Shown here piece by piece: positions 1-51,993 of a stretch of DNA of 64,000 bases. Numbering within the stretch: position 1 is the stretch's first letter; every line of letters starts with the position of its first letter. The notes beneath the pieces were generated by a model. The model had not been told where the DNA came from. It made no database searches and worked only from the letters and a program-made list of their open reading frames with translations. The translations under genes were made by a program, and so were the position numbers. Source of the DNA: Octopus sinensis (Eukaryota); assembly GCF_006345805.1 (NCBI RefSeq), contig NC_043011.1, positions 9,424,001 to 9,488,000 on the forward strand. Direction: 5' to 3'.

Positions 1-392
1 GAGGCAGTCTTCAAACTTGCCTATGTGGTTTGGAGCATCCGGTGGGCAATATGTATTGCATATGACTATATTATGTTGTCTTATGTATACAATTAAAGTG
101 TCACATACCGAATTTGAGTATGATCAGTAAGACCTGGGGTGTGAGGTCATCCCGGATGTATACAGCAACTCCACCATGGCTCCTTTCCCTTCTGTCTGTT
201 CGTAGTATGGCATAGTTTGGTACATGTACTTCTGCGTCCTCTATATCAGGGCTGAGGTGAGTTTCCACGAGTTCTATACATAGGGCTTGATTGCATGCAG
301 TAAGATCTCCCAGGAAAGAAATTTTGTTTTTATTTTGATGCAAAAGGTCCCCCAATATTTACTAAAAGTATTAAGGTGACGGCTGTGCAGGC
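1..392 (-). mobile_element. CR1/L2-like LINE ORF2 N-terminus (APE endonuclease fragment), degraded, continues off window start
   Basis: Minus-strand translation gives LILLVNIGG..QNKNKI..LVETHLSPDIEDAEVHVPNYAILRTDRRERSHGGVAVYIRDDL..NIVICNTYCPPD. This matches typical LINE endonuclease motifs (ETHL, R.DR...GGGVAVY). Contains frameshifts. Confidence 0.85.
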
Positions 393-393
393 G

Positions 394-1661
394 ATATATA
401 TATAATATATATATATATTATTACATATATATATATATATATTACATATATATATATATATATATTACATATATTACATATATATATATATATTACATAT
501 ATATATATATATATATTACATTATATTATATAATATATTACATATATTAATATATTATATATATATATATATTACATATATATATATAGTATTACATATA
601 TTACATATATAATATATATTACATATATATAGATATATTACATATATTACATATATAATATATGACATATATAATATATATAATACATATATATATACAT
701 CTATATATAATATATATTACATATATTACATATATATATATATATTATACATATATTATTATATTACAATATATATATATTACATATATATATTATATAT
801 ATTACATATATTACATATATATATTATTAACATATATATATATATATTACATATATATTATATATATTTACATATAGATATATATATATTACATATATAT
901 ATATATATATATTACATATATAATATATATTACTATATATATATATATTACAGATATTACATATATTATATTATATTGACATATATATATATATATATTA
1001 CATATATATATCTATTACATATATTACAATATTAATATATTACATATATTACATATATATAATATATATTACATATAGATATATATATATATATATATAT
1101 TAGTACATAGATATATATATATATATTACATATATATATATATATATATTACATATTTACATATATAATATATTACATATTTACATATATATACTATTAC
1201 ATATATTACATATATATATATATTACATAATTACATATATATATATATACAACATATATTACATATATAGAATATTACATATATTACATATATATATATA
1301 TTACATATATTACATATATATATATATTACATATATAGTATATATAGATGACATATATTATATATTACATATATTACAATATATAGATATGACATATATA
1401 TATATGATATATTACATATATTACAGTATATATATATATATTACGATATTACATATATTACATGATATATATATAGAATATTATTCATATATTACATATA
1501 TATATATAGGACATATAGATATATATAGATACTATATATAGGATACATATATATATATATATATTATTACATAGATAGATATTACATATATATATATATA
1601 TATATATATATAACATATATATATATACATATATATATATTATATATTACATTATATATAT

Positions 1662-1692
<31 letters not shown>

Positions 1693-1803
1693 TACATATA
1701 TATATATATATATATATACAGCATATAATATATATATATATAATATATATTACATATATTAATATATATTACATAATATATATATTACATATATATATTA
1801 CAT
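394..1803. repeat. Long degenerate (TA)n / ATATATTACAT low-complexity satellite
   Basis: About 1.4 kb almost entirely A/T, with recurring TATTACATA. Confidence 0.95.
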
Positions 1804-3358
1804 ATCATCATCTCATCATCATCATCATTTAGCGTCCGGTTTCATGCTAGCATGGGGGGGACGGTTCAACTGGGGTCTGGGGAGCCGAAGGCTGCACCAG
1901 GCCAGTCAGATCTCTGGACAGGTTTTCGACAGCTGGATGCCCTTCCTAACGCCAACCACTCCGAGAGTGTGGGGGGTGATTTTATGTGCCACCGACACAG
2001 GTGCCAGACGAGGCTGGGCGAACGGCCACGCTCGGATGGTGTTTTAGTGTGCCACCGACACAGGTGCCAGACGAGGCTGGCAGACGGCCACGCTCGGATG
2101 GTGTTTTATGTGCCACCGACACAGGGCCAGATGAGGCTGGCGGACGGCCACGATCGGATGGTTTTTGTTACGTCCCCAAAGCACGGAGGCCAGTCTATGG
2201 CGGTACTGGCTACGGCCACGTTCGGATGATTTTCTTTGTGTGTCACCGGCACTGGTACCACAACGATACAAATTCCATTTATGTTCATCTATTTTGATTT
2301 GTTTTGATTTGATTTGATTTGATTTGATTTGATTTGATTTTCACTTGCCTCAACAGGTCTTCACAAGTGTCACAAGAAGGAAGGTATGCATAGGTGGACT
2401 GTCTACGAGTCGCGGTCTTCGATGGTGTCTTTATGTGCCACCGACACAGGTGCCAGATTGGCTGGCGAACGGCCACGATCGGATGGTTTTCTTGTGTGCC
2501 ACCGGTACTGGAACCACAAAGATACAAATTCCCATTGATGTTCATCTATTTTGATTTGGTTTATTTCACTTGCCTCAACAGGTCTTCACAAGTGTCACGC
2601 GTGTCACACACTTGCTCAACAGGTCTCCACAAGTGTCACACACTTGCCTCTGCCTCAACAGGTCTTCACAAAGTGTCAACACACTTGCCTCTGCCTCAAC
2701 AGGTCTTCACAAGTGTCATAAGAGGGAAGGTAAGCACAGGTGGACTGACTACGTCGCCGGGTCTTTGGATGGTGGTGGTGTTTTTTTGTGCCACCGACAC
2801 AGGGTGCCAGGTGAGGCTGGCGAACGGCCACGATCAAGGGTGTTTTGTTGTGCCCACAGCACGGAGGCCAGTCGACGGCCACGTTCGGATGGTTTTCTTG
2901 TGTGCCACCACCGGTTACTGGAACCACAAATTACAATCCATTGATATTCATCTATTTTGATTTGTTTGATTTTCACTTGCCTCAACAGGTCTCTTCACAA
3001 GGGTCACACACTTGCTCAACAGGTCTCCACAAGTGTCACACACTTCCTCTGCCTCTGCCTCAAGGTCTTCACAAGTGTCACACACTTGCCTCAACAGTCT
3101 TCACAAGTGTCATAAGAGGGAAGGTATGCACAGGTGGACTGACTACGTCGCCGGGTCTTCGATGGTGTCTTTATGTGCCACCGCACAGGTGCCAGATGAG
3201 GCTGGCGAACGGCCACGATCGGATGGTGTGTGTTGTGCCCACAGCACGGAGGCCAGTCGATGCGGTACTGGTTACGGCCACGTTTGGGTGGTTTTCTTGT
3301 GTGCCACCGGCACTGGTACCACAAAGAATACAATCCACTGATGTTCATCTATTTTGAT
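1802..3358 (-). mobile_element. RTE-related SINE with (GAT)n tail plus tandem array of internal units (array 1)
   Basis: Starts catcatc..tttagcgtccggtttcatgctagcatgg (tail on minus strand) and contains gatgcccttcctaacgccaaccactccgagagtg. Followed by ~60-bp modules and three larger units starting tcacttgcctcaacagg at ~2341, ~2566 and ~2972. Confidence 0.85.
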
Positions 3359-3635
3359 TATATATATATAGTATATATTATATATATATAGATATATAGA
3401 TATTATATATATATATATATATTTATATAGATATATATATATATATAATATAAAATATATATTATATATATATAATATATAATATAAAGTATATATATAA
3501 TATATAATATATAGATATAATATAAGATATATATATAATATTATAATAATATATATATATATATATAATAATATATATATAGATAATATATATATATATC
3601 ATATAAATATATTATATATATATAATATATATAAT

Positions 3636-3672
<37 letters not shown>

Positions 3673-3753
3673 TATATATATAGTATATATATAGATATAT
3701 ATAATATATATATATATTATATATATATTATATTACTTATATAATATATATAA
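3359..3753. repeat. (TA)n-rich microsatellite
   Basis: Nearly pure A/T dinucleotide repeat. Confidence 0.95.
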
Positions 3754-5372
3754 CACAATTCAGCAGTAGGCCCCGATAGGTTCCCTGCTTGTGTCCTGAA
3801 GGTGTGTCGACACCAACTTGCATCTCCCCTGCTAATCTGTGGAGAAACTCACTGGATGCTGGCTATATTCCAAAAACCTTCTGTCCAGTCTGTTGTCCCA
3901 GTTTTCAAAAAGGGAAACAAGTCCCTTGCAGTGAATTACCGTCCGATCTCACTCACCTCACATATCATCAAGGTATTTGAGAGGGTGGTGAGATCTTGAA
4001 TAACCCAATTTCCTGGAAGCAACAGACGGCTGATCTCCAACCAAATGGGTTCCGTAATGGAAGGGACTGCCTAACGCAGCTCCTGCATCACTTGAGGACA
4101 TTTTGAGAGCTTTGGGGAGAGGGCTCCAACACCGATGTCATCTACCTGATTTCAGTCAGTAGGCCTTCGACAGGGTCGATCACAAGATCCTATTGAAAAA
4201 AACTATCCAAATTGGTGTCTCTGGAAAGTTACTGAAATGGATAAGTGTTTCCTGACAGACAGATCTCAACATGTTGTAGTTGAAGGGGTACAATCAAGCC
4301 CAGCCAGCCACACAGTCGTAGTGGCATCCGCAAGGCACTGTGCGGGCCCACTTCTTTTCATCATTTACATTAATGACATTAATGACATCAACAAGCACAG
4401 CAACATAAAAATCTTTGCAGATGACTCCAAGTACAGAAGGTCATAAATGAGGCGAGTGACCGGACATGCCTTCAATCAGATCTACTGGCTGTTATCCAAT
4501 GGCAGTAAAAAACAATATGCTGGAACGAGGATAAATTTGAGCTAATCCACTTTGGAAAAGAGGATGCCCTGAAACTCCCATACTCCCTTCCTCAGATGAA
4601 ACTCTCACAGTGTCCAACAACATCAGAGACTTGGGAGTAATGTGGGCAACAACATAACTGGGCCACTCATATAAACACCAAAGTTGACATGGCCCGCAGA
4701 ATGTGTTTCCTGGATTCTCAGAACTTTCAGTCGAGAGATATCCACACCATTATCCTTCTCTTCTCCACTTTTCCCGACCCCACCTTGAATACTGTGGTCC
4801 ACTGTGGTCTCCCACACAATACAAGGTATAATAAAAGTTGAAGCACCTCAAAGGGCATCACAAAAAAGATAGATGGCATGACAGGCCTCGACTATTGGGG
4901 TCGACTAGAAAAGCTAAAAACTCTATTCTCTCCAACGTCGTCGTGAGCGCTACATCATCATGAATGATGTGGAAAATTTTCCATCAGCATTGCCCAAATG
5001 ATGTTGGCATCCCTTTAAGGTACATCCAGGCTTGGGCCCCGTGCCATCCGCCCAACCAAACAAAATCGCACTCTCATCTCATAACAACATACGGCACAAT
5101 TATTTCACCTCAATGGCCCCGCTCTCTTTAACATTACACCAAAACACATTAAAACAGAAACTGACCCTATAGGGTTCAAGAAGTCTTTGGACAGATTCCT
5201 CAAGAAATCCCAGATAAACCCCCTACACCCGGATATGTCTCTGTAACAATAACTCTCTACTGATGGGGGGCCATAGTGCCCAAATTCTGACTTGAAAGAC
5301 TTCACCAGGGTTGCTATTAAGTTAGACATGGCCTGGGCCAATAATGGCCGAAACCTGTCAAAGTGTCAAAGT
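3754..5372 (+). mobile_element. CR1/L2-like LINE 3' half (reverse transcriptase and 3' end), frameshifted
   Basis: Translated pieces: GPDRFPACVL; VVPVFKKGNKSLAVNYRPISLTSHIIKVFERVV; GFRNGRDCLTQLLH; DVIYLDF..AFDRVDHKILLKK; FLTDRSQHVVVEG; GPLLFIIYINDI; KIFADDSK. Ends in a short gtcaaagt repeat before the TA tract. Confidence 0.93.
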
Positions 5373-5577
5373 ATATATATATATATAATATATATATATA
5401 TATCTTATATATATATATATATATATATAATTATATAGATATAATATATATATATAATATATATTACATATATATTACATATATTATATATATATATATT
5501 ACACACACACATATATATATATTACACCACACAACACATATATATATATTACACCCACACATATATAATATATATAT

Positions 5578-5621
<44 letters not shown>

Positions 5622-5630
5622 TACATATAT
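5373..5630. repeat. (TA)n/(CA)n microsatellite
   Basis: Direct reading. Confidence 0.95.
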
Positions 5631-8600
5631 ATATGTCAATCTCGCTACATACATATACACATACAAGAACACTCTTATAATTGAATATGTCATTTTCCAT
5701 GCTACATAATCAGTTGTTCAATTAACTGAATTATCTATTTATTGATTGGAAGTGGTTGAGTATTCCAAAGACTCCTATTCTGAACATATTCCTTACTTCC
5801 AATCAGTGCAACCCAGGCTGGGTCAAAGTCTTCCTACATACAAACACTATAGAATCTTACTCAGATAGTTCTATACAGCACAAGCTGTACAGTGGGATTG
5901 AACCTGCTGCTGCATCCATTACACACATCCCTAATTAGGGTAATTAATCTAGATAAGAAATACAACAATTGTTGCAGGGACTGCATTGGGTCATAATATA
6001 AATGGTAGGATAGAATACAGTCTCCAGTCAACTTTCATCTAACTAACACCTTGAATCCAGCTTGTCTTTGCTTCAACATGTTCTACTTTACTAAGATTGC
6101 AGTATGTGATTTGAGGAAGATTTGGCTGCTATTTCTATAAAATCTGGAGATTGTGAAGAAGTTCCCTTGTTGATTTATAATATATAGACGTATAAATAGC
6201 AGCAAACGAGTAGGGTGTAAAGGACATTAACATTGTATACTGATGTAAACTGACTTCAAGATGTTGTGGGGTTTGTTGAAGGAAAATATTGGAAATTCAC
6301 ATAAAAAAAGTAGAGATCATGTCTTTGTTTACTAAATATGACATCTGGTTTCCTCCTCATCATCATCATCATTGAACGTCCAGTTTCCATGCTGGCATCG
6401 GTTATGGTTACTAAACATGAAATATGGTTGTAGTATGATGACAGTATGAAAAAACTTCAGCATCATCAATGCTATGGATGGAGGAAACTGATGAAGAATC
6501 AAGAATATTAAAAGTATAAGAAAACAATTTAGACTCTAAGAAACAAAAGATTGGTTAATGCAATGATAAGTTTATCATTATTGGTGGTAGAAGTTATTCC
6601 ATAGATGAAAACTAATCTAACCCCTTGGTGATGTTGTGTTACAATGGGCAGCATCTCAAGTAAGGAATCAAAGAGAAGGACAAGAACTGTTGATTGGTCA
6701 TTTCTACAGATTTTGTAAAGAAAAAAACTTGAAAAAAAAATCAGTTTGTTATCTGAAGAATGAATAGAAAACATTGATTGGAATGATTGTTGAAAGACAT
6801 AATGAATGTAATTGGGAAATTATCCGTAGTTGGGTGAAGTAATAAGAATAAATGATGGTGTTGCAGAGACGTCACACTGGCCTAGAGGTAGGTAGGGTTT
6901 ACAGACTGAGGATCAGGTTGGAGAATTAGAAAGAAATTCTGTTTGGATTTTGAATAACACCTGTGTAAATCCATTGCGTGGAAGGAAAAGATGGAATGAT
7001 GTGAAGTGGAGGAAATGACTAGAATTAAAAAATGGGAAAGTTAAGCAACAATGCTGAATAATTATATTGATGACTGGAATGATAAGTCTTTCAATCAACA
7101 AATGGAATTTGATTGTTGTAAAGGAATAAGAAACTCTTGGCACCCTGGTATCTGTTTGGTTCACTGTGGCTGCTTCAATTATAAACAATGATGTTGATGG
7201 CATTTTACCATGAAATAGTGTGGAGATGAAAAATAAATGGTAAACCGAAGCCAATGATATTGATTTGTTTTATCCTGGAAAAATGGACAGAGTAGATCCT
7301 GCTGGGATTCTGATTGGAAACAGAGAGATATGAGATTATTAACATTGGTAAAGTCTGGTGCTCTACCAATTCTAATGTTGGACTGGCAGCAGTAGTGATA
7401 GTGGTGGTAGTAGCAGCAGCTGTAGTGGTGGTAGTTCTAGTAGATGGGAGAATGTGACAAAATAGAAAAATATTCATTCAAAAAATAATATCAAAAAGTG
7501 TTAAAGAAAATTAATAAAGTACCAACAAAGAAACAAAGATGATGGCATGCAGATATTTTCTCAGTGAAGCATAAAATGGAAGGAGAAAGTTTTTAGGAAA
7601 TGAAAGTATAAACATAAACAAACGGTAAAGGGAAGACAAATCTTGTGAACTCGTATGTCTAGAATTTCTCGACTGTAAACGATTTACATTTTGGCTTTAG
7701 ATTTCCTTCTGTACCGTTTTGCTGGCTTTATTATTTCATTCTCCTTCTAAAGGACACAGCTGATTTAAGTTTAAATATTTTGTTTAAATATGAGAATATA
7801 AAGACATTGCAAGTAAGAAGTTGCAACTGTATCCAAATCGCAAAGGGAAGCCAATTGTTAGTTTATAGTTATTACTGTCCTAAAAACATGTCACACAGTT
7901 GGATTAAATTTTTTTTCTTTACAGTTAATCAAAGGGATAGACTAATTAGATAACGAACGACATTGTTTAGTGGCATGTCAGTGAGTGAGGCTACCACATT
8001 GTCTTGTGGTGTGTTTGTGGCAATACCTACCATTGTTACTGAGAACGTTGCTTGAAGTGAAATGGACTTTTAACTGAGGAAACATTTCTCTTATTTGTAT
8101 TAATGCTATTGAAACACTGAAATGGTGATTATCAAAGGCCAGTTTCAAATGAATTGACTTTCTTTCAAAGATGCTGTATTTGCAATTGTAACAAGCAAAG
8201 GTTGATGATATTGTTTCAATATCTAGTCTAGACATTTCATTTATCAATCTGAGAAAGAACTAAACGCATAATGCTGATATTGTAGAGACGTTTTATAAGA
8301 GATACAGCATCTGATGCTTTGATTGCATTTATTTCACCTCTGTGGGTGGATGGGTGGGTATGAGTGAAAATACATATTTCTTCAGTTTTCTTTCTTTGAA
8401 AAGACCAGGAATGCTAGTGGGGGTTGCAGTGGTGGCTGAAAGGTCAAGTGTATTTAAACAACCTGAGAATAAGGACATTATTAAGGTTGTTAAGAATAGT
8501 TGATTAAAAGGTCAAAAATCTGTTGGGTGGAAATACACACACACACACACATTTATCTATATATATAATGGCATATGCACAATAATGAGGGCTTAGGGCA

Positions 8601-9787
8601 GATTGTGGTCAAAGTACATTGTTGTCTTGTAGTGAAACATGGCCACCACCAAATGTAGAGGATATGTAAAGTTGGGCAGAAACAAAACGAGCATTTTTCT
8701 CTGGCTTAGAACAGCAACACCTGTTCTTCTCCAACTGAGCTTCAAAGGTAGTTTCATGTGTGGCTCAAGAGAGTCTAAACACCCAGTCTTCAGTAACATG
8801 GCATAGTTAATGGTTTCTAACATAGCACACACCACCACCACCACCACCACTTCTACTGTTACTACTACTACTACTGCTTCTACTATCAGCTTGTTTACTG
8901 CTACCACTGCCACTATGACCCACACCTGACACAGTTAATGTAAAACATTTCATGAACATATTGGATATATGAAAACGGATAAACATCACAACATCGTTTC
9001 TTTCCATCAATAAAACTGAACATTTCATTACTGTAATAGAAATGGTGTTGGTAGTAGTAGCGGTAGTAGCTGTAGTTGTTGTTATTGCTCATGCTATTGT
9101 CCTCATACACTCTGATGTCTGTGTATGTGTGTGGTACAGAAATTCCATAAAGGAAATGAAAATTGTATTGAATTGCAATATTTATGAGTCTGTTGCTTTC
9201 TAGGCAAACAACAACAACAACAACAAATATCTATTAATAATAATAATAACAATAATATTTTTTCAATTCACCCATCATATTTCAGCTTTAAATTTTGATA
9301 AAAGCCTGACTTTAGCTGATATTACTAAATAATGGGTTTATCTCTTTACTCCGATTGTCCATATAATGGTAATTTCAGACATGGAATGGTTTATATGCTG
9401 TGATTGTCTGTAAACCAGAAATATATGATGAGCAGTGAAACTGTGCGGTTCCAAAAGAGTGAAGCCATTCTGCTATGGTAATATTGCATCACAGAAGATA
9501 TTGAGGAAATGGTGTTCTTTAAGGGGGGTTTTTGGCTGTTCTAACAGAGTCACATGACCATCAGGGTCTGAGGTGAAACTGCATCAGTTTTTTAATATTT
9601 GTTTTGACAAAAATAACTCATAATGCAAAAGCAGCCATAAACATAGTGAAATTGTCACATGTAAAGTGGGGGCTATGCCTGTCACATGTGGTGGTGGTTG
9701 TGGGGCTGTCACATGGGGAGTGTCGCTTAATGTTTGGACTTCACAACACTTTACTTGTTTTCATATATGTTTTATTTATATATCGGT

Positions 9788-10200
9788 GCAGGAGTGGCTG
9801 TGTGGTAAGTAGCTTGCTAACCAACCACATGGTTCCGGGTTCAGTCCCACTGCGTGGCATCTTGGGCAAGTGTCTTCTGCTATAGCCCCGGGCCGACCAA
9901 TGCCTTGTGAGTGGATTTGGTAGACGGAAACTGAAAGAAGCCTGTCGTATATATGTATATATATATGTATGTGTGTGCATATGTTTGTGTGTCTGTGTTT
10001 GTCCCCCTAGCATTGCTTGACAACCGATGCTGATGTGTTTACGTCTCCATCACTTAGCGGTTTGGCAAAAGACTGATAGAATAAGTACTGGGCTTACAAA
10101 GAATAAGTCCTGGGGTCGATTTGCTTGACTAAAGGCGGTGCTCCAGTATGGCCGCAGTCAAATGACTGAAACAAGTAAAAGAGTAAAAGAGTAAAAGAGA
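9788..10200 (+). mobile_element. tRNA-derived SINE with CORE-like centre, near full length
   Basis: Head ggagtggctgtgtggtaag (A-box-like) and gggttcagtccc (B-box-like), then gtggcatcttgggcaagtg (CORE-like), an internal TA/TG tract and a (gtaaaaga)n tail. Partial copies occur elsewhere in the window. Confidence 0.85.
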
Positions 10201-12806
10201 TACCTTAGAAAAAAAAAAGTACCTCTTTTACTTTTGGTGAATGTCTGTGCAGATCGCTTTCTTCTTCTATTACTACTACTACTACTATTACTACTACTAC
10301 TACTACTACTACTACTTCCACTCCAGCAGTTCACTAACTATTTCAATGTATTTCTATGTCTTTATATTGTATGTGTGCTTCTGTGTGTGTTTGTATGCAT
10401 GTATTTGAGTACTTAGTGGTGTGTGTCTGTGATTAGATTTGCCTGTTTAAACTCTTGTTTTCCCTTATTCTGCTTTTGTTACGTACATACATATGTGCAC
10501 ATAAACATGTCACCTTACACCATGCTTCATATCTCATCATGTTTCAAGAAAGCTGGTTATTCTTTCCCCCTCTACGACTGACAAACCTCCACAACCTGTC
10601 CAAGATTTTATTTTTCCCTCTAAAAGATTTTTAACTGCATTAAACTTATCATTTGCTGCTGCTGGATCATAGTAAAGAAGGGGTTACAATCAGGGGTGGA
10701 GATTGCTTCTCCCTCATGGATTTGATAACAAAATGTTGAGGCAGATTTCATAGACTGCAAAGACTCTTGAACCAGCGCTCACGAGGACAACACAGTCCAG
10801 TCTCAAGAGCTGCTTATACTCAGAGGATTTAGATTTAATTAAGATTAAAAAGATCTCTAGCTATGTTTATTGACTGATCTGAAAATGGTGAAGCAATATT
10901 CCAATTTGGAAGGGCTTGGAAAGGACCATTAGGCCTGTGAATCTTTTGAAGGAGGTCAATTTGGGGGAGTGTTTATTGACCCCACATAAATTACATATCT
11001 GCTGACATGTAGTGTGTGTATGTGTATATAAATGCATGTGTGTGTCACATGTTGACATGTAGTATACATGTCACCTATTGACTTAATATAGTATATATTT
11101 GTTGATGTGTAGTGCGTGTGTGTGTCAGCCCCGTGCTGACATGGTATATATGTTGTATGTTGACAATAATGGTTTTTATCATATTCTAATATGAAACAAA
11201 TTACCAACCGACCGACTGACCAGCTGCAATAAATTTAGTTTATTAAAAAACAAAAATATATAAAAATAAAAACACAAAGGAAGGTTATGAATGCAACAAC
11301 TGATCTACATCTGATGACACATGCTTGCAAAGGGTTAAAGAGCATGCATGACAACACATAGGATTGAAACCCTGATGGCACTTAGAACAATGCAAGAAGG
11401 TTTATTGCTAAGCTGACTAAGAAGCTTTCCCATATGACAGCAAACTTTATTATTATTATTATTATTATTATGAGGATGGATGGCAGAATGGTGGATGCTT
11501 GACAGAATGATTTGCAGTACTTGGTTGGGTCTCTTTAAATTCTGATTTCAGATATAAGTTTGAACCGTTGTCCTTCATCCTTCAATACTCTCTGTAGAAG
11601 TTTGCATTATTTCGTTAGGGTGAATGGAAGAAGGATTTTAAAAAAATAATACAACCCCCCGCCCATATAAATCCATTCAGTTACATTTGCTTCTGTTTGA
11701 AGAGTTTCCAGCCCAAATAATGTAAAGAAAATTCCCACTCGATAATTGAACTGTGAAAGATGGTTTATAGGATTCAGTAGCATTGTGGTTCATTAAGAAC
11801 TGGAAGTCTGAGAGTCTTAGATGCTCTTGTAACCAAATATCATTATTTGTCATCATTCATTAACACCACTTTCCATGCTATAAGGGGTGAGAGCATGAGG
11901 CAATGCCCTCCTACACTGACCAGGGCAAAGGTCATTTGGAGACAATGTCCTCCTACACTGGCCAGGGCAAAGGTCATTTTTGATTATTGTGTTTTGTGAG
12001 GTGTAGACAAATATTTCCTTACAAGTGGTAAAAAGTTTGAAAGTAATAATAATTATAAATTTATGATTAAAATATTTGAGTCACTTTGTTCTGAGTGATG
12101 GAGAAAGTTTTTGGGCTGTTTCAAAAACTGAAAGATAATGTTTCACAGACTAATATATTGTTATGCTAGATAATTTATTTTAATGATAAGAGATGGAGAA
12201 AGAAAGTGTCTTTTATTGATGAAAATGAGCTGGAATTTGTTGATCTTTGAGTTAACACTAAAGAGTCAACCTAGATCCATTCCTGTCTACATACAGAAAC
12301 TACCAACAAAAGGGCAGAGTTTAGTGACAACTCATCAGGAACTCTCCACCAATATGTGGGCTTTGTAGTATTGCATGTTGGTTTAACTAGATACCACTTC
12401 TGCAACAGTCATCTTAAATGTTTGAGTCAAATATTCCCTTTTAAATTTCCAGTTGTATTCTTTAAAATCCTATTTGTGATATCACTAGTTAACCCTGAAA
12501 AACAGACTATTATTATCAGTATGGCAGCATTTCTGGGCAACTGGAGACATGATGGAGTTGAAGAGTCCTTAGTAAAGAGATGTTAAATAGTCACCACTGA
12601 TAGAACTGTTTGCTATAGTAATAGTAGTGGGGGGGATGAGGAGGATGAGGAGGGGGCAGTGAAAATAAACGCAAACCCAAACATGCAGCAAAATAAAAAT
12701 GAAACAAAAAATTAACAATGAACTGGCACCAGACTATATAGCTACTGCTAGACTGGGTAGGGGTCACTGCTGCCGGTGAAAGGCTGCAGGTGAATAGGAT
12801 GATTAC

Positions 12807-12860
12807 CTCACACCGAGCCGGAACATATCTGTAACTAGGTACAGTCCGTTGTGCTTCTTT
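12807..12860 (-). CDS. CASK: CASK exon, PDZ end / PDZ-SH3 linker, copy B (KEAQRTVPSYRYVPARCE), phase 0-0
   Basis: Acceptor tttctgtcattccag, donor GAG|gtaatc, 54 nt. VPSYR....CE matches the CASK exon that follows ...LQKML (recalled as [23 protein letters not shown] in human). Confidence 0.8.
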
Positions 12861-12960
12861 CTGGAATGACAGAAATTGACAAGAAAGGTGCTTCAGAGAA
12901 AAGGGAAGTGAACAAGAAAATAAAGAGGATATAAGCAGTCTCAGATAAGGAATAACATAC

Positions 12961-13056
12961 CTCTTTGGGGTTCAAACTCTGGTCGAATTTGTCACTGAAG
13001 TACCAGGAGGAAGCTGATGGGACAACATTGAAGCTGACGGGGCCTTGTAGAGATTT
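12961..13056 (-). CDS. CASK: CASK exon, PDZ terminal strand, copy A (KSLQGPVSFNVVPSASSWYFSDKFDQSLNPKE), phase 0-0
   Basis: Strong acceptor ttatttttctattttgtcag, donor GAG|gtatgt, 96 nt with an open frame. K..QGPVSFNVVPS aligns with the CASK [12 protein letters not shown] strand. Confidence 0.7.
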
Positions 13057-13879
13057 CTGACAAAATAGAAAAATAATAAATGAATTAGGTTAAACGTGAA
13101 ATACAGAAGATGATACACACAACATAAGTTGTCTTTAATATGATTTAATTAAAATCGTGTTGGAGTATTGCATGAAATATTTCAGTGAAAATGTCAGTTC
13201 AATGACATGGGGGGGGGGGAGAAATCAAGGTTTTACAGTAATTATTCAAAAACTAAAGAGAATTTAGCAATCAAAACTATTGATCTGCAGAAAACATTGG
13301 TAAGTTATTTCATTACTTAGCCTCAGGTTTATACGTATATTATAGCTAATATATAACACTCCAGTTCGAACTTTATTATATCTGGTCATTTAAAAATCAA
13401 TCTGAAATCATTTACAATGGATTTCATATTAAATAATATATTTTACATCAATCAGTTTTGTTTGTACTAACTGAAGGCTTTCAAAATTCAGCTATGAAAT
13501 TCTCTGTCACTGTCTCCATGATATAAACGGCTATAAGGCACCATGTTTAATATATTCACAAGAAAAGCCCTATATCTGACTGGTAATCCCCATTTCTTTA
13601 TTGATCAACTTACAATGATTATTCAGATCTAATCTATTCGTTATTTGTAATTACATTCTACACAACTTGTTACAATGTTTGTCTCTTTGAAATCCCTACA
13701 TTGATTGAAATCAATACTTCTTAACCCTGTCATCAAACTTAATCCTTTCAAATTCCATCTAAACATCATCAATTTTATCGATTCCCCACCCCCATTCTGA
13801 CCTCCTGATTGTAGAGGAACACCTTATGGTCAAGTGTCTTGAAAACATTAAATATATTTATATTTGTGACAAAACTATT

Positions 13880-14050: not shown

Positions 14051-15187
14051 ATCCAAAAACGAAATACTTGTGACAATTATATAGGAAAATACCATGTATG
14101 ACATTATGGAAGTGACTCTATACTATCTGTTTTATGTCTGGAACAATCCTTGGCTCTCTTTGATATATTTGGTGGATTTGGGGTAAAAATGTAATAACAC
14201 TGGTAGGATTCCTGGTTGTTGAAAAATATTGGAAAGAAGAATTGGGGAATAATATAACATGAGATAATATTGGGAAGATGGAAGAATGCTGCAGATATAT
14301 TTTGTGGTGTTATATAGAATAAAACAGTTTCCATTGACAACAAAATTCAATTTGTCTACATTCTACACAATTCTAACAAAACTCTCTTCCATGATGCCAA
14401 ACTACAAGAGTTAATAATTGTAAGAAAGTTTCAAAGAATGGCTGTAAGTTTGTGCTTAAAAATCACTTGATTCCTCAAATTGTTTTTGGCATGTGATTTC
14501 TGCGATAATTATTGATTACTAGGAATGGAAAATATCTAAGAATGGAACCAAGTCCATTTTTAAGGAAATCTAGCAGACGATATGAGAACTATAATAATAT
14601 TTGTAGAACAAATAGCTTGAGTAAAATAAACTGAGCTGGTAGTGGTCATGGTGGTTGTATTGAATTGGTGGTGGTTGTAGTGGTAGAGGTTACAGGGTTG
14701 GTGGTGGATGTAGTGTGGTGGTGGTGGTGTTTATAAAAGTGCTTATAGTGAAGTGGTGGGATGGTAATATTTAGTGACAGCGATGATAGTAGTGGTGGTG
14801 ATAGTAGTAGTAGTATTGCTAGGAATGGGGTGGTGGTAGCAGTGGTGCTGGTTGTAGTTTTAACAATCCCAAAAGATACATCAGCCATTTATTATTCAAA
14901 TATCCACAATATTCAATGGTAAACGTTATATGAATGTTATTGTTATTATTGGCCTTGAGCCGAAATCAGAAACCATTCTCTTTTATTACATTCTCTTTTA
15001 TTTATGTGTTATTCAATCAATACGACCGGTTGCAAGGCTTTCAGATCACAATCATAGACTTCTCAATAGAGTTCAACATTCATTAGCTACTGTACTCAAT
15101 AGGAAGCTATATCTTACATTAGAGCACAGTGACATACATTCCACAGCAGAGTACAATGACATTTAGTATGTATCACTATAGAATGCC

Positions 15188-27848: not shown

Positions 27849-29715
27849 TCATCATCATCATCATTTAACGTCTGCTTTCCATGCTAGCATGGGTTGGACG
27901 GTTCAACTGGGGTCTGGGGAGCCCGAAGGCTGCACCAGGCCAGTCAGATCTGGCAGTGTTTCTACAGCTGGATGCCCTTCCTAACGCCAACCACTCCGAG
28001 AGTGTAGTGGGTGATTTTATGTGCCACCGACACAGGTGCCAGACGAGGCTGGCGAACGGCCACGCTCGGATGGTGTTTTTATGTGCCACCGACACAGGTG
28101 CCAGACGAGGCTGGCGAACGGCCACGCTCGGATGGTGTTTTTATGTGCCACCGACACAGGTGCCAGACGAGGCTGACGAACGGCCACGATCGGATGGTGT
28201 TTCTTACGTGCCCACAGCACAGAGGCCAGTCGATGCGGTACTGGCTACGGCCATGTTCGGATGGTTTTCTTGTTTGCCACCGGCACTGGTACCGCAAAGA
28301 TACAAATTCCATTGATGTTCATCTATTTTGATTTGATTTGATTTGATTTGATTTTCACTTGCCTCAACAGGTCTTCACAAGTGTCACAAGAAGGAAGGAA
28401 GGTATGCACAGGTGAACTGACAACGTCCCAGGTAGGGGCCACGGGTTATGGCCTGACTAGTCTTGCCGTGTCTTCAGATGATGTTTTTATGTGTCTCCGA
28501 CACAGGTGCCAGATGGATGGTGTTTGTTACGTGCCCACAGCACGGAGGCCAGTCGATGCGGTACTGGCTACGGCCACGTTCGGATGGTTTTCTTGTGTGC
28601 CACCGGCACTGGTACCACAAAGATACAAATTCCATTGATGTTCATCTATTTTGATTTGATTTGATTTGATCACTTGTCTCAACAGGTCTTCACAAGTGTC
28701 ACAAGAAGGAAGGTATGCACAGGTGGACTGACTACGTCCCAGGTAGAGGCCACGGGTTATGGCCTGACTAGTCTTGCCGGGTCTTCGGATGGTGTTTTTA
28801 TGTGCCACCGAAACAGGTGCCAGATGAGGCTGGCGAACGGCCACGATCGGATGGTGTTTGTTATGAGCCCACAGCACAGAGGCCAGTCGATGCGGTACTG
28901 GCTACGGCCATGTTCGGATGGTTATCTTGTGTGCCACCGGCCCTGGTACCACAAAGATACAAATTCCATTGATGTTCATCTATTTTGATTTGTTTTGATT
29001 TGATCACTTGCCTCATCAGGTCTTCACAAGTGTCACGAGAAGGAAGGTATGCACAGGCGGACTGACTACGTCCCAGGTAGGGGCCACGGGTTATGGCCTG
29101 ACTAGTCTTGCCGGGTCTTCAGATGGTGTTTTTATGTGCCACCGACACAGGAGCCTGATGAGGCTGGCGAACGGACATGATCGGATGGTGTTTGTTACAT
29201 GCCCACAGCACGGAGGCCAGTCGATGCGGTACTGGCTACGGCCACGTTTGGATGGTTTTCTTGTGTGCCACCGGCACTGGTACCATAAAGATATAAATTC
29301 CATTGATGTTCATCTATTTTATTTTGATTTTCACTTTCACTTGCCTCAAAAGGTCTTCACAAGTGTCACAAGAAGGAAGGTATTCACAGGTGGACTGACT
29401 ACGTCCCAGGTTGGGGCCACGGATTATGGCCTGACTAGTCTTGCCGGGTCTTCGGATGGTGTTTTTATGTGCCACCGACACAGGTGCCTAGTCTTGCCGG
29501 GTCTTCGGATGGTGTTTTTATGTGCCACCAACACAGGTGCCGGATGAGGCTGGCGAACGGCCATGATCGGATGGTGTTTGTTACGTGCCCACAGCACGGA
29601 GGCCAGTCGATGCAGTACTGGCTACGGCCACGTTCGGATGGTTATCTTGTGTGCCACCGGCACTGGTACCACAAAGATACAAATTCCATTGATATTCATC
29701 TATTTCGATTTGTTT
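27849..29715 (-). mobile_element. RTE-related SINE plus four head-to-tail ~316-380-bp units (array 2)
   Basis: SINE tail at 27849. Three 61-bp modules at ~28016, 28077 and 28138. Units start tcacttg.ctca at ~28354, 28670, 29003 and 29337, each ending in a (tttga)n-type tract. Confidence 0.9.
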
Positions 29716-29789
29716 TATGTGTATATATGTATGTATATGTATGTATATATATATGTATGTATGTATATGTATATTCATGTATGTATGTA

Positions 29790-29997
29790 TGTGACCATGT
29801 GTGTATCGTTGGTGATTTTTTCCCTCCGTCTTCCTTTCCTTGGATCTTTCCTTTTCCTATGTTTCTGACGAAGAGCTCCGCTTGAAACGTTAAATCGTCC
29901 TCCTTCTTTCTTTCCTGAGCATCCAATAATACTATACTTGTTCCACGTCCTCGTGTTGTTGTGTTTTCTCTTTGTGTTTTTATGTTTGGATTAACTT
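29790..29997 (+). repeat. Putative Penelope-type pseudo-LTR fragment carrying a hammerhead motif
   Basis: Pyrimidine-rich ~200-bp unit between microsatellites that contains the hammerhead core below. The PLE assignment is inferred from the known PLE-hammerhead association. Confidence 0.55.
29861..29895 (+). ncRNA. Minimal type I hammerhead ribozyme motif (palindromic stem III, dimer type)
   Basis: gttt-CTGACGA-a-GAGC-tcc-GCTT-GAA-ACGT-T/aaat. Stem I is guuu/aaau, stem II is GAGC/GCUU, stem III is self-complementary ACGU, and the cleavage triplet is GUU. Confidence 0.7.
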
Positions 29998-33204: not shown

Positions 33205-33440
33205 TAGAAACCTTACAGGTGTGTGTATATGTTTGTGTGTCTGTGTTTGTCCCCCAACATTGCTTGACAACCAATGCTGGTGTGTTTATGTACCTGTAAC
33301 TTAGCAGTTTGGCAAAAGAGACCAATAGAATAAGTACTAGGCTTACAAAGAATAAGTCCTGGGGATTGATGTGCCCCACTAAAGGCGGTGCTTCAGCATG
33401 GCCGCAGTCAAATGACTGAAACAAGTTAGAGATAAGAGGT
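33205..33440 (+). mobile_element. 3' half of CORE-like tRNA SINE
   Basis: Closely matches ~9965-10180 (tgtttgtccccc..gcttgacaacc..ggccgcagtcaaatgactgaaacaag). Confidence 0.8.
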
Positions 33441-37070: not shown

Positions 37071-37346
37071 GTATATAGTTATGGTATATTCCGTTAGGAA
37101 GTTGCTGAGTACAAGATAAAGCTCGTCTACCCTCAGAATTACCCAATACTATCTGGTAGCATTATTACATACTTCCATGTTTATGTTTGAGTATTTGTTG
37201 TGTGAGAATATAAAATTGAAGAAACTGGAGTCAACATGAAGGAGTTCAGTTGGGGAGTTATTAAAACAATAACTGTCCAACGGTACTCCTTGTTAATTCC
37301 AATTTCTTCAATATATGGATATACATTTACACATAGATTACATGGG

Positions 37347-37384
<38 letters not shown>

Positions 37385-37810
37385 AGACTGTATTTCAAGT
37401 GGTTAGCATTAACAGCAACAAGAATACTTCATGCTGTTGTAATTCATTTGAAATTACTACTCTCTATTATTTATAGATTTCCATTTTCACACACACACAC
37501 ACAGATGACTGCATAAATATTTGTTTAGTCAGCAACAAAACGAAGGTTATTTAATATTAATTACTATCAGATATTGATGTTTGATGAGTTCTTTTATAAA
37601 AGTTCTTCTGAGCAATTGAGTATGAACAAAGGGTTAGTGTCTGTCTGGAGCAGACAACATGTGTGTGGTGGTGTTAGTCATGGACATGAAGGTCACTTAA
37701 GAGTCTGGAATTGATTCCTATGCATCCTGTTTTGTTTTGTGCAACAAGGACTATAACTTAATTCATACCTGATAGAATTTCAAAACTGATTGTTGCTGTC
37801 AATAAAAGTT

Positions 37811-39790: not shown

Positions 39791-40559
39791 CATCACTGTG
39801 ACTATGACTAACATACACCACCACCACCACCTCCACACCACATCACAATGACCATAACCAACAGATGCAGTTTAAAATAGTGAAATCTAGGTATCATTGA
39901 CTACTTTCTTATGAAATATAAATGTTTTTTTTTTTGAAAAACTTTTTGCATTTTTAGATGCTTTCCTTATTTATATCTTCCTTCATTTTCTACTTCAAGC
40001 AAACTGCAATGTTCTTATATATCTTATATATATATATATATATATATATAATTATTTGCAGGGAAAAATTCAATTTAGAAATACTAAATCACCTTTCAAA
40101 AAATATAATATATATATAAAAATAGTGAAATTTATGTATCACTGACTACTTTCTTATGAAATATAAATGTTATTTTATTTTTTTGAAAAACTTTCTAAAT
40201 TATTAGATGCTTTCCTTATTTTATATATATATATATATATATAAATTATATATACATATATTAATTATATATATATAATTTATATATATATTGTTGTGTC
40301 TGTGGAGAGTCATTCTCTTTTATTGCCTTATTATTTAAGACCCTCACCGGTAAAGTTTCCACTCATTTACCATGAAAGAGGTTGCAAGATGCGACGAAAA
40401 TTTAATGAACACACATACATACATGCATAATGCACTTACGTGTATGCATACATACATACTTACATGTGTATGTGCACACACACTGACCCACACACATACA
40501 TAAACAAACAAAAAGAATGCAGCTCAGATAACAGATAGAGTCAATGACTAATGAAAAGG

Positions 40560-40990
40560 TTGCAAGACTCAATGACACCTGTGCAGGTGGCAAGTAAAGA
40601 AACACCTTTTCGACCCTGTGCTTGAGGAGACCTATTGAGTCAAGTACACCAACATCAAAAATCAATGGAAGTTGTAGTTGTGATCCCTGTGCCAGTGGCA
40701 CGTAAAAAGCACCATCCGAACATGGCCGATGCCAGCGCCGCCTTGACTGGCTTCCGTGCTGGTGGCACGTAAAAAGCACCGACCAATCATGGCCTTTTGC
40801 CAGCCTCCGGTGGCACGTAAAAAGCACCCACTACACTCTCAGTGTGGTTGGCGTTAGGAAGGGCATCCAGCTGTAGAAACACTGCCAGATCAGACTGGAG
40901 TCTGGTGCAGCCTCCTGGCTTCCCAGATCCCCGGTCGAACTGTCCAACCCATGCTAGCATGGAAAACGGACGTTAAACGATGATGATGAT
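40560..40990 (+). mobile_element. RTE-related SINE, long form
   Basis: gaggagacctattgagtcaagt, ggcacgtaaaaagcacc modules, ggcgttaggaagggcatccagctgtagaaac and a (GAT)n tail. Confidence 0.88.
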
Positions 40991-42706: not shown

Positions 42707-43102
42707 GCCATGACTGCTGTGGACATGCATAAGCTCGCAAGGAATGAATCCAGTATGATCCGATGGATGTGTAATGTCAGTGTGCATACTCGACAGAGTG
42801 TAAGTACTTTGAGAGAAAAGTTGGACCTAAGAAGCATCAGATGTAGTGTGCAAGAGAGACGACTGCGCTGGTATGGTCATGCGGTGAGAATGGATGAGGA
42901 TAACTGTGTGAAAAAGTGCCACACCCTAGCGGTTGAGGGAACCTGTGCAAGAGGTAGACCCAGGAAGACCAGGGATGAAGTGGTGAAGCATCACATTTGA
43001 ACATTAGGTCTCACTGAGGCAATGACTAGTGACCGAGACTTTTGGAAATATGCTGTGCTTGAGAAGACCCGGCAAGCCAAATGAGACCATAACCTCGTGG
43101 CC
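42707..43102 (+). mobile_element. RTE-clade LINE 3' end, little decayed
   Basis: MHKLARNESSMIRWMCNVS..LREKLDLRSIRCSVQERRLRWYGHAVRMDEDNCVKK..EGTCARGRPRKT..AMTSDRDFWKYAVLEKTRQAK*. Contains the RLRWYGHV and RGRPRK motifs. Confidence 0.9.
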
Positions 43103-43189
43103 ACACACACACATTTTTGTACTGTATATATGGGTCCATCTGGACAATGAAGGATTCTTGTTATTATGTAGGGTGGTTTGTTGGTAGAA

Positions 43190-46602: not shown

Positions 46603-46688
46603 CAACATCCTTTGTAACATTTCCACTGTTTTATTGCGAACACTAAATCCATTGATTTCCCGTATTTCATCTCCAACATGGAGTGTGC
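46603..46688 (-). CDS. CASK: CASK exon, PDZ core ((G)[28 protein letters not shown]), phase 1-0
   Basis: Acceptor ttctctcttccag, donor TTG|gtaag, 86 nt. Near-identical to [28 protein letters not shown]. Confidence 0.96.
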
Positions 46689-50424: not shown

Positions 50425-50503
50425 CTTGCCGATGAATCATGCCACCATGCATGATTCGTGCCACTAAGCAACGGCCCTCTTCATTTACTTTTAAGGTAAT
50501 ACC
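50425..50503 (-). CDS. CASK: CASK exon, PDZ N-terminal half ([26 protein letters not shown](G)), phase 0-1
   Basis: Acceptor ttataatttcag, donor AAG|gtatgt, 79 nt. [13 protein letters not shown] is diagnostic of the CASK PDZ, and the exon joins in phase to both neighbours. Confidence 0.96.
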
Positions 50504-51801: not shown

Positions 51802-51993
51802 CATTGGTTCGTCTGCATTTTTTTGAAATTGAACCAGTCGAACACGGGTGACATTCTCCATGTCTATGTCCCCATCGGAACTATCGGCATCAGCATCGCC
51901 ATTCATGTATGGTTGTTCTGGGGGCGGGGTCACTCGGATAGCTTCTTCACCATAGACTTCATGAGCAACAACATCATGGGCTTGTAATAAACC
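51802..51993 (-). CDS. CASK: CASK exon, end of L27 domain 2 and linker into PDZ ([64 protein letters not shown]), phase 0-0
   Basis: Acceptor ctttttttctag, donor ATG|gtaag, 192 nt. [20 protein letters not shown] and [20 protein letters not shown] match CASK. Absent from the ORF track because it has no early ATG. Confidence 0.97.

What the first reader, a model, noticed from the sequence alone, without database searches (positions are those of the whole stretch)
12807..13056. Tandemly duplicated PDZ-terminal exon in CASK: two phase 0-0 paralogous exons 100 nt apart
Seen in sequence: exon A (13056-12961, KSLQGPVSFNVVPSASSWYFSDKFDQSLNPKE) and exon B (12860-12807, KEAQRTVPSYRYVPARCE) both begin cag|AAA, end GAG|gta, contain a VPS motif, keep frame and have good splice sites. 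Established (from recall): human and fly CASK finish the PDZ domain with one short exon of the form R/K-E-x-RGS-[IV][15 protein letters not shown]. Inference: that exon was duplicated and the copies split its job. A keeps the last PDZ beta strand (G-P-V-S-F-x-V-V-P-S) plus a new 18-aa tail; B keeps VPSYR..CE, the link into SH3. The isoforms A, B and A+B would differ in PDZ integrity and in PDZ-SH3 spacing. This matters because PDZ-SH3-GK acts as a coupled supramodule in MAGUKs and CASK binds neurexin through it. It could be a lineage-specific splicing switch in a synaptic scaffold.
Basis: partly seen in the sequence, partly recalled or inferred. Interest (0 to 1): 0.8.

Follow-up and report, generated by a model that had tools for sequence, protein, structure and literature searches.

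The report
Ancient paired PDZ-end exons in CASK
The two neighbouring exons at the end of the CASK PDZ domain are real, old duplicates also found in a sea slug and several other invertebrates; here the usual copy has lost the five codons for the last PDZ strand, so the unusual copy must supply it.

Summary
Observation confirmed. Exon A (13056-12961) and exon B (12860-12807) lie on the minus strand, both phase 0-0 with good splice sites, 100 nt apart, after CASK PDZ exons at 51993-46603. No other PDZ-terminal exon exists in the window.

Interpretation partly supported. A and B are paralogous, but the pair is not lineage-specific. The same order (PDZ-3, long A-type exon, canonical 23-aa B-type exon) occurs in the gastropod Elysia chlorotica and at least three unidentified invertebrate genomes; two more show the A-type only. 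Flatworm, vertebrate-, insect- and annelid-like loci have only the canonical exon. A-types resemble each other more than same-species B-types (0.50 vs 0.38), so one old duplication is likely. A's tail is not new: DKFDQSLNPKE matches ERFENNNTKE and ERYENNNHKE.

What is special here is B. It is the canonical exon's ortholog with one clean 15-nt deletion removing T-L-K-I-V, the strand core. Only A can complete the PDZ; it aligns ungapped to the solved human CASK PDZ.

I infer A is obligatory and B is appended or optional as linker. No RNA data or other cephalopod genome was reachable, so isoform usage is untested.

The parts
51802..51993 (-). CASK exon covering the L27-PDZ linker and the start of the PDZ ([25 protein letters not shown]...[14 protein letters not shown]). 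The acceptor position is inferred.
   Evidence: tblastn with recalled human CASK, 72% identity, E 7e-19; splice context.
50425..50503 (-). CASK PDZ exon 2 ([26 protein letters not shown] + 1 nt); ends in phase 1.
46603..46688 (-). CASK PDZ exon 3 (G)[28 protein letters not shown]; donor TTG|gtaaga, ends in phase 0. The position of this intron is conserved across animals.
   Evidence: panel of 80 loci.
12961..13056 (-). Exon A, the A-type PDZ-terminal exon (96 nt, phase 0-0). Bases 13056-13015 encode KSLQGPVSFNVVPS, the end of helix alpha-B plus the last beta-strand. Bases 13014-12961 encode the A-type PDZ-SH3 linker ASSWYFSDKFDQSLNPKE.
   Evidence: ungapped alignment to human CASK PDZ 6NH9/1KWA; AF2 strand F87-V90; orthologous A-type exons in L081, L037, L082, L084, L085, L087.
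12861..12960 (-). The 100-nt intron between A and B (gtatgt...ttccag). It is pyrimidine-rich over its 3' 70 nt. Retaining it shifts the frame into a stop codon.
12807..12860 (-). Exon B, the ortholog of the canonical 23-aa PDZ-terminal exon, reduced to 18 aa (KEAQRTV^PSYRYVPARCE). The 15-nt deletion junction lies between 12840 and 12839 and removes the equivalent of T-L-K-I-V.
   Evidence: single 15-nt gap and identical donor TGTGAG|gtaatc against the L082 B-type exon.

Best explanation
**Shown.** An old tandem duplication of the exon encoding the last PDZ beta-strand plus the PDZ-SH3 linker of CASK produced two forms.
- The A-type exon is 27-32 aa. It has G-x-[VI]-[ST]-[FL]-K-V-x-P, a 13-18-aa tail, and mostly ends in KE.
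- The B-type exon is canonical: 23 aa, [RK][DE][14 protein letters not shown]-x5-C-E.

Both persist in the same order, each with an intact strand, in the gastropod Elysia and in several other invertebrates. In this (octopod) genome B has lost 15 nt, which is the strand core T-L-K-I-V. It keeps its frame, both splice sites, KEA at the start and PSYR..CE at the end. It lies only 100 nt after A.

**Inferred for other species.** Because each copy encodes a full strand, the pair is probably used as alternative, probably mutually exclusive, exons. These would give two versions of strand F and a short (11 aa) or long (about 20 aa) PDZ-SH3 linker.

**Inferred for this genome.** A is the only sequence able to complete the PDZ, which is otherwise about 80% identical to human. 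A should therefore be included in all functional CASK mRNAs. B has most likely become a linker cassette spliced in after A:
- A then B then SH3 gives one strand, a 38-aa linker and the canonical ...CE junction to SH3.
- A alone may also occur and gives a 20-aa linker ending ...KE.

Changing linker length would tune how the PDZ couples to SH3-GK in the PSG supramodule that binds neurexin-type ligands.

**Confidence by layer.** About 0.9 for the ancient pair and for B's deletion. About 0.8 that A is obligatory. About 0.5 that B is spliced in after A.
For: 1. Paralogy. A's first 14 aa are the outlier match to the canonical strand. B is the top HMM hit and aligns globally as KEA-[5-aa gap]-VPSYR..CE.

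2. Conservation of the pair.
- Elysia L081: A-type 43796-43876 and B-type 45791-45859.
- L082: A 11723-11815, B 14860-14928.
- L084: A 13057-13149, B 13513-13581.
- L083: candidate A, plus B and SH3.
- L087: A 2918-3010, B 3891-3959.
- L085 and L037: A-type only before the contig ends.
- All are phase 0-0 with AG/GT.

3. One old duplication. A-A identity across species is 0.50, against 0.38 for A-B within a species. B-B is 0.69, and B against single-exon species is 0.70. Column 11 is V in 8/8 A-types and I in 11/11 B or single exons. There is no nucleotide similarity between A and B.

4. A's tail is conserved. tblastn of window A against L082 gives 40.6% over all 32 aa. The tails are DKFDQSLNPKE, ERFENNNTKE and ERYENNNHKE.

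5. B's deletion. There is a single 15-nt gap against L082 B, with the same acceptor context and the same donor TGTGAG|gtaatc. The B-types of all five other pair species are 23 aa.

6. PDZ integrity.
- The window with A aligns ungapped to solved human CASK PDZ through ...VVPS.
- Pfam PDZ is covered 2-80/81 with A, as in the canonical control, and 2-76/81 with B only.
- AF2 places a strand at F87-V90 of A (block pLDDT 73). With B only it gives no terminal strand (block pLDDT 45) and a weaker strand A.

7. Splice competence. A and B have polypyrimidine fractions of 0.80 and 0.75 and donors GTATGT and GTAATC, comparable with the constitutive exons. The 100-nt intron has room for a branch point.

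8. Precedent. Human CASK varies the same linker with cassette exons 19 and 20 (PMC8208546). The PSG supramodule is required for neurexin binding (PMC12666738).
Against: - No transcript evidence of any kind. The protein and contig collections held nothing sharing words with A, B or the junctions.
- No second cephalopod could be examined, so the age of the 15-nt deletion is unknown. It could even be an allele or an assembly error.
- The Elysia gene model that joins the A-type exon to IYVRA is a computational, partial model.
- The AF2 models are mediocre: mean pLDDT 61-62, Foldseek TM about 0.52 to CASK PDZ.
- Pfam bit scores hardly differ between isoforms.
- The hosts of L037, L082-L085 and L087 are unidentified.
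- The octopod origin of the window rests on my recall of an octopus SINE.
- Co-inclusion of A and B could be sterically blocked if B's branch point lies upstream of the long pyrimidine tract.
Confidence: 0.55

Rival explanations
1. A and B remain strictly mutually exclusive here, as inferred for other species. The A-only mRNA encodes normal CASK. The B-only mRNA encodes a CASK whose PDZ lacks strand F, a regulated 'PDZ-off' scaffold that cannot bind neurexin-type ligands but keeps the CaMK, L27, SH3 and GK interactions.
For: The pair descends from exons that each encode a full strand. The A-B intron is short (100 nt), and its 3' 70 nt are pyrimidine-rich. The branch point could therefore sit near A's donor and block A-B splicing, as in tropomyosin exons 2/3 (the mechanism is from established knowledge). 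B keeps intact splice sites.
Against: A truncated PDZ is likely to misfold. AF2 gives no terminal strand and destabilises strand A. Both exons are multiples of 3, so nothing such as NMD penalises double inclusion. A branch-point-like TTCAC lies 48 nt from the acceptor and 52 nt from the donor, which is compatible with splicing.
Confidence: 0.17
2. Exon B is a decaying relic. After this lineage switched to the A-type exon, B lost its strand and is no longer spliced in. A alone links the PDZ to SH3, as in the Elysia gene model.
For: The deletion removes the structurally essential part of B. An A-type exon joined directly to the SH3 start is what the Elysia model shows. A's terminal ...KE|gt resembles other A-types that presumably splice to SH3.
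Against: B keeps an open frame, a good acceptor, a donor identical to that of L082 (TGTGAG|gtaatc), and the motifs KEA, PSYR and CE. It is about 70% identical in nucleotides to a deeply diverged ortholog outside the gap. A disused 54-nt exon would be expected to lose these. A very recent loss of use cannot be excluded.
Confidence: 0.18
3. One reading: a lineage-specific duplication in cephalopods, followed by partition of the ancestral exon's two functions between the copies.
For: Within the window alone, A holds the strand and B holds VPSYR..CE.
Against: The same A/B pair exists in Elysia and in other invertebrates, with both copies complete. A-types group across species. A's tail is shared with other A-types. 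A and B show no nucleotide similarity.
Confidence: 0.03
4. The duplications arose independently in several lineages, and the A-type features are convergent.
For: Both Elysia copies share LPSL where others have VPSY, which hints at a lineage-specific origin or at gene conversion. PDZ exons of CASK do duplicate repeatedly: PDZ-3 in Elysia and in the scorpion.
Against: A-A identity across species (0.50) exceeds A-B identity within a species (0.38). Column 11 separates the types perfectly (V in 8/8 against I in 11/11). A precedes B in every case, and the A-types share tail motifs.
Confidence: 0.07

Closest known systems
Human/mammalian CASK cassette exons 19 (69 bp) and 20 (36 bp) in the PDZ-SH3 linker (PMC8208546)
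   Same: Same gene and same region: alternative, frame-preserving exons that change the length of the PDZ-SH3 linker inside the PSG supramodule. The A+B linker here (38 aa) falls within the human range (23-46 aa).
   Different: The human exons lie after the PDZ-terminal exon, are not copies of it and never touch the PDZ fold. Here the alternative exons are duplicates of the PDZ-terminal exon itself and include strand F.
Tandemly duplicated, mutually exclusive exons in general (e.g. tropomyosin exons 2/3; surveys by Kondrashov & Koonin 2001 and Letunic, Copley & Bork 2002; cited from established knowledge, not retrieved)
   Same: Adjacent paralogous exons in the same phase that encode the same structural element and are conserved over long evolutionary time. 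In Elysia, L082, L084 and L087 the pair looks like a textbook case.
   Different: In this window the two copies differ in length (96 vs 54 nt) and one has lost the shared structural element, so it cannot substitute for the other. Mutual exclusivity is untested, and NMD cannot enforce it because both exons are multiples of 3.
PALS1/MPP5 PDZ-SH3-GK supramodule (PDB 4WSI; Li et al. 2014, as cited in PMC12666738)
   Same: This is the structural framework in which PDZ-SH3 linker length and the PDZ C-terminus matter for ligand binding. The window's PDZ matches these chains.
   Different: No alternative PDZ-terminal exons are described for it. It serves only as the functional context.

Membership tests
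CASK (MAGUK p55-type scaffold) gene | PDZ domain highly similar to CASK, preceded by the L27-PDZ linker | tested here: met
   72-83% identity to recalled human CASK over three exons. Best PDB hits are human CASK PDZ, E 4e-40. Database hits are named CASK.
CASK (MAGUK p55-type scaffold) gene | CaM-kinase, L27, SH3 and GK domains in the same gene | not testable with these tools
   These exons lie outside the 64-kb window. No SH3 exon occurs in 1-12806.
Tandem exon duplication | Adjacent exons of the same phase, both homologous to one ancestral exon | tested here: met
   Both are phase 0-0. A matches the first 14 aa of the canonical exon and B its whole length minus 5 aa.
Tandem exon duplication | Both copies retained in other species, indicating selection on both | tested here: met
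   Pairs found in Elysia L081, L082, L084, L087 and, with a weaker A, L083.
Mutually exclusive exon pair | Exactly one of the two exons is present in each mature mRNA | not testable with these tools
   No transcript data for this or any pair-bearing species.
Mutually exclusive exon pair | The copies are interchangeable: similar length, same structural element | tested here: not met
   In the window A is 96 nt with the strand and B is 54 nt without it. The feature is met in the other species (81-93 nt against 69 nt, both with a strand).
Mutually exclusive exon pair | An enforcing mechanism (steric donor/branch-point clash, frame or NMD penalty, competing RNA pairing) | tested here: inconclusive
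   There is no frame penalty because both are multiples of 3. The 100-nt intron has a branch-point-like site 52 nt from the donor, which permits splicing, but a more upstream branch point cannot be excluded. RNA pairing was not examined.
PDZ-SH3 linker cassette exon (human exon 19/20 type) | Frame-preserving exon encoding only linker between the end of the PDZ and the start of SH3 | tested here: met
   Met for exon B. It is 54 nt. All of it lies after the strand in the alignment to the canonical exon, and it has low confidence (pLDDT below 50) in AF2.
PDZ-SH3 linker cassette exon (human exon 19/20 type) | Optional inclusion | not testable with these tools
   Needs RNA data.

The most novel reading that the evidence does not exclude
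An ancestral mutually exclusive exon pair has been converted in octopods into two consecutively spliced exons. Deleting the redundant beta-strand from the canonical copy resolved the structural conflict of double inclusion. This made the non-canonical A-type strand obligatory and created a long PDZ-SH3 linker, comparable to the vertebrate one, by a different route. That would be a documented transition from mutually exclusive to co-included exons in a core synaptic scaffold, and convergent with vertebrate linker expansion.
Probability: 0.35. Interest if true: 0.65.

Novelty: new member of a known kind. Interest (0 to 1): 0.5.

Why it matters
CASK binds neurexins and other adhesion molecules through a PDZ that works only when coupled to SH3-GK. 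Human disease variants show how sensitive that module is (PMC12666738).

A conserved pair of alternative exons that swaps the last PDZ strand and doubles the PDZ-SH3 linker would be a natural switch for ligand affinity or supramodule geometry in molluscs. I found no description of it in the held literature.

The octopod state is also a clear case of exon turnover after duplication. The canonical copy is crippled and the divergent copy has taken over an essential structural role. It offers a natural experiment on how much linker the PSG module tolerates. The finding is solid but incremental, because tandem exon duplications are common and the splicing outcome is untested.

Tried and rejected
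- **Close relatives or transcripts of A/B.** A word-index search with the end of PDZ-3 + A + B gave no candidates. An exhaustive HMMER scan of 1.84 billion representatives with A+B gave only four chance hits to long repetitive proteins, for example a plakin-repeat-like protein. A metagenome scan using A- and B-specific peptide patterns found nothing A- or B-specific from close relatives. A profile of PDZ-3 + A-type returned only genomic read-through ORFs; these nevertheless led to the useful long contigs.
- **Read-through hits.** The 98-100% coverage hits of the first search are insect intron read-throughs, not A/B homologs.
- **P0002.** This spliced, B-only transcript was considered as evidence that A is skipped. 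I rejected it because its closest genomic relatives (L029, L039) have no A-type exon.
- **Identifying the source.** Looking up an ORF from the window found nothing on record.
- **Papers.** The Aplysia/Octopus scaffold paper has no held supplements. Literature searches for a CASK mutually exclusive pair found nothing relevant.
- **DNA and repeats.** DNA-level A-B similarity and repeat or transposon context were both negative.
- **dN/dS.** Not attempted, because the species are so diverged that the exon flanks are at alignment-noise level.
- **Elysia artefact.** An assembly artefact was considered for the extra PDZ-3 copies and rejected. The copies are 88% identical with diverged flanks, and no N run lies in the interval.

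Full report
**1. The observation.**
Reading 12600-13300 on the minus strand shows both exons exactly as described.
- Exon A, 13056-12961, encodes KSLQGPVSFNVVPSASSWYFSDKFDQSLNPKE, with splice context ttttgtcag|AAA...AAAGAG|gtatgt.
- Exon B, 12860-12807, encodes KEAQRTVPSYRYVPARCE, with splice context cattccag|AAA...TGTGAG|gtaatc.
- They are separated by a 100-nt intron. Retaining it would shift the frame into a stop.

A tblastn probe with human CASK (recalled sequence, used only as a probe) places three upstream CASK exons on the same strand: 51993-51802, 50503-50425 and 46688-46603. The last ends ...LQRML|gtaaga in phase 0. No SH3 exon lies in 1-12806. The window has no Ns. No other exon resembling RGSxTFKxVPSYR occurs in any of the six frames.

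**2. Is it more than chance?**
- A position-specific score from the first 14 residues of canonical exons ranks the start of exon A first among 59,519 positions. It scores 35.7, against 23.1 for the next hit. The maxima of 40 Markov-shuffled windows averaged 23.0 +/- 2.3 and never exceeded 28.2.
- An HMM of the canonical 23-aa exon ranks exon B first (E 0.016, profile positions 12-23).
- B aligns globally to the canonical exon as KEA-[5-aa gap]-VPSYR..CE, with a score of 47 that none of 2000 shuffles reached.
- A and B show no nucleotide similarity beyond chance, and the region is not repeated elsewhere in the window.
- Splice signals of A and B are as good as those of the constitutive PDZ exons.

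**3. What other animals have.**
Spliced homologs (P0002, fly P0025 and others) and about 20 genomic loci recovered from metagenome assemblies give the baseline. The phase-0 intron after ...ML is conserved and is followed by a single 23-aa exon, [RK][DE]xRGS[IV]T[FL][14 protein letters not shown]|gt. The flatworm Schistosoma margrebowiei has the same arrangement (L088).

A subset of organisms has two exons, always with the A-type first:

| Organism / locus | A-type exon | B-type exon |
|---|---|---|
| Elysia chlorotica (gastropod), L081 | RELKGSVSLRVLPSLASPKSEHLAQKE, 43796-43876 | KEARGNIVLQILPSLRIFVPQCE, 45791-45859 |
| L082 | KSLRGTISFKVIPSQRAVIPRERFENNNTKE | [23 protein letters not shown] |
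| L084 | KSLHGSVTFKVFPNIDAPLIDQPDTITAMQE | [23 protein letters not shown] |
| L087 | KTLKGHVTFKVQPHATSGLFAQQHMNNNHKQ | KDARGNVCLKIVPGHRNSPAHCE |
| L083 | weaker candidate, RSEGLIVLKVIPHPNSYLCEQSQYLYPPSK | B-type, followed by SH3 |
| L037 | A-type 240 nt after PDZ-3 | contig ends first |
| L085 | A-type about 2.2 kb after PDZ-3 | contig ends first |

All these exons are phase 0-0 with AG/GT. Loci with a complete PDZ-3-to-canonical intron from vertebrate-, annelid- and insect-like organisms, and L086, contain no A-type exon.

**4. One duplication or many?**
Over the 14-residue core:
- A-types from different species are 0.50 identical.
- A and B of the same species are 0.38 identical.
- B-types are 0.69 identical to each other and 0.70 to exons of single-exon species.
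- Column 11 is V in all 8 A-types and I in all 11 B or single exons. Column 3 is L or V in the A-types, against A in the B-types.
- Tails after the core's final P-x (PS in B-types) are 13-18 residues in A-types (mostly ending KE) and exactly 9 ending CE in B-types.

The window's A tail is homologous to other A tails: DKFDQSLNPKE, ERFENNNTKE and ERYENNNHKE, with 40.6% identity over all 32 aa to L082.

This favours one old duplication. B is the ortholog of the canonical exon, and A is a faster-evolving sister copy. The window carries an abundant SINE that I recognise from memory as octopod (recall, not a database test). If that is right, the pair predates the gastropod-cephalopod split.

**5. 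What is special in this window.**
Against L082's B-type exon, the window's B aligns with a single 15-nt gap:
- L082: ...GCACAAGGCAGTGTA[ACACTGAAGATAGTG]CCTAGTTAT...
- Window: ...GCACAACGGACTGTA[---------------]CCTAGTTAC...

The acceptor context matches and the donor TGTGAG|gtaatc is identical. The deletion removes T-L-K-I-V, the core of strand F. All five other B-types are full length. The A-B spacing (100 nt) is also the shortest seen; the others are 363-3044 nt.

**6. Consequences for the protein.**
- With exon A, the window's PDZ aligns ungapped to the crystallised human CASK PDZ (6NH9, 1KWA) through ...VVPS, and KSLQGPVSFNVVPS lies on [14 protein letters not shown].
- Pfam PDZ is covered 2-80/81 with A, as in a canonical control, but only 2-76/81 with B alone. 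Bit scores are nearly equal, so this is modest evidence.
- AlphaFold2 with a 23-sequence alignment places a strand at F87-V90 of exon A (block pLDDT 73). Everything after VVPS has low confidence.
- The B-only construct has no terminal strand (block pLDDT 45) and a weaker strand A.
- The models are mediocre: mean pLDDT 61-62. Foldseek's top hits are CASK PDZ structures, but with TM about 0.52. I use them only qualitatively.

**7. Mechanism.**
*Shown:* an ancient, conserved A/B pair, and strand loss in B in this genome.

*Inferred:* where both copies are complete they are probably used alternatively. That would give two versions of strand F and a short (11 aa) or long (about 20 aa) PDZ-SH3 linker.

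In this genome the rest of the PDZ is under strong constraint, with about 80% identity to human. Functional CASK must therefore include A. B keeps its frame, its splice sites and the KEA/PSYR/CE motifs. It is about 70% identical in nucleotides to a deeply diverged ortholog outside the gap, so it still looks selected.

A and B are two small exons 100 nt apart, flanked by introns of 33.5 kb and more than 12.8 kb. Under exon definition they would most naturally be recognised together. I therefore favour A then B then SH3, possibly alongside A then SH3, with B acting as a linker cassette. The resulting 38-aa linker is in the range human CASK achieves with cassette exons 19 and 20. The PSG supramodule, whose geometry depends on this linker, is required for neurexin binding.

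*Rivals.* Two cannot be excluded without RNA data:
- strict mutual exclusivity, with a PDZ-defective B-only isoform;
- B as a decaying relic.

A third, independent duplications in each lineage, is disfavoured by the comparisons in section 4.

**8. Limits.**
- No RNA data and no second cephalopod genome were reachable.
- Most pair-bearing contigs come from unidentified hosts.
- The Elysia mRNA model is computational and partial.
- I found no description of this exon pair in the held literature. Genome annotation pipelines may nevertheless already list such isoforms.

**Verdict.** It is wrong about lineage specificity and about the novelty of A's tail. This is a new, conserved instance of tandem alternative exons in CASK, with an unusual octopod twist, and its splicing outcome remains to be measured.

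Noticed in passing
L081 (Elysia chlorotica RQTK01000273.1) 42776-45272: The PDZ-3 exon is present three times: 42862-42948, a partial copy at 43011-43073, and 45176-45262. Copies a and c are 88% identical over 183 nt. Their flanks have diverged, and the exon differs at only two synonymous sites. Each terminal exon (A-type, B-type) is therefore preceded by its own PDZ-3 copy, which may form two alternative two-exon modules.
   Followed up: partly
L089 (Centruroides sculpturatus KZ495658.1) 37266-37352 and 37615-37701: Two diverged tandem copies of the CASK PDZ-3 exon lie 263 nt apart (..VSVANQSVDTLQKML and ..VSVADQSIDTIQKML). This looks like a separate tandem exon duplication in a scorpion. The terminal PDZ exon was not reached (the locus contains gaps).
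   Followed up: no
L083 5784-5849: A partial extra copy of the PDZ-3 exon ([22 protein letters not shown]) lies 4.3 kb upstream of the real one, inside a region with retroelement ORFs. It is probably a pseudo-exon.
   Followed up: no
L037 700-848; also P0127-P0129 and P0133: In these organisms PDZ exons 2 and 3 are fused, with no intron at ...HRQ|GTLHV. The window, Elysia, L082-L084 and L087 keep that intron. This could be a useful marker for grouping the unidentified hosts.
   Followed up: no
window 9860-10200 (+), also about 33387-33409 and many pseudo-ORFs (e.g. 1852-3357, 27881-29885, 40402-40827): There are multiple copies of a SINE-like repeat. The copy at 9860-10200 matches, almost base for base, the abundant octopus SINE I know from memory and ends in (AGTAAAAG)3. 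This supports an octopod source for the window.
   Followed up: partly
window 11897-11979: A 42-bp tandem repeat (2 copies, 92% match) lies in the intron downstream of exon B. No function is apparent.
   Followed up: no
P0121-P0124 (representative search with A+B): The only hits to the A+B peptide in 1.84 billion representatives are multi-stretch matches to long repetitive proteins, for example a 6874-aa plakin-repeat-like protein matching ..DQSLHPKLLSAERAVTGYRDPY... I judge them chance or compositional matches, not homologs.
   Followed up: partly
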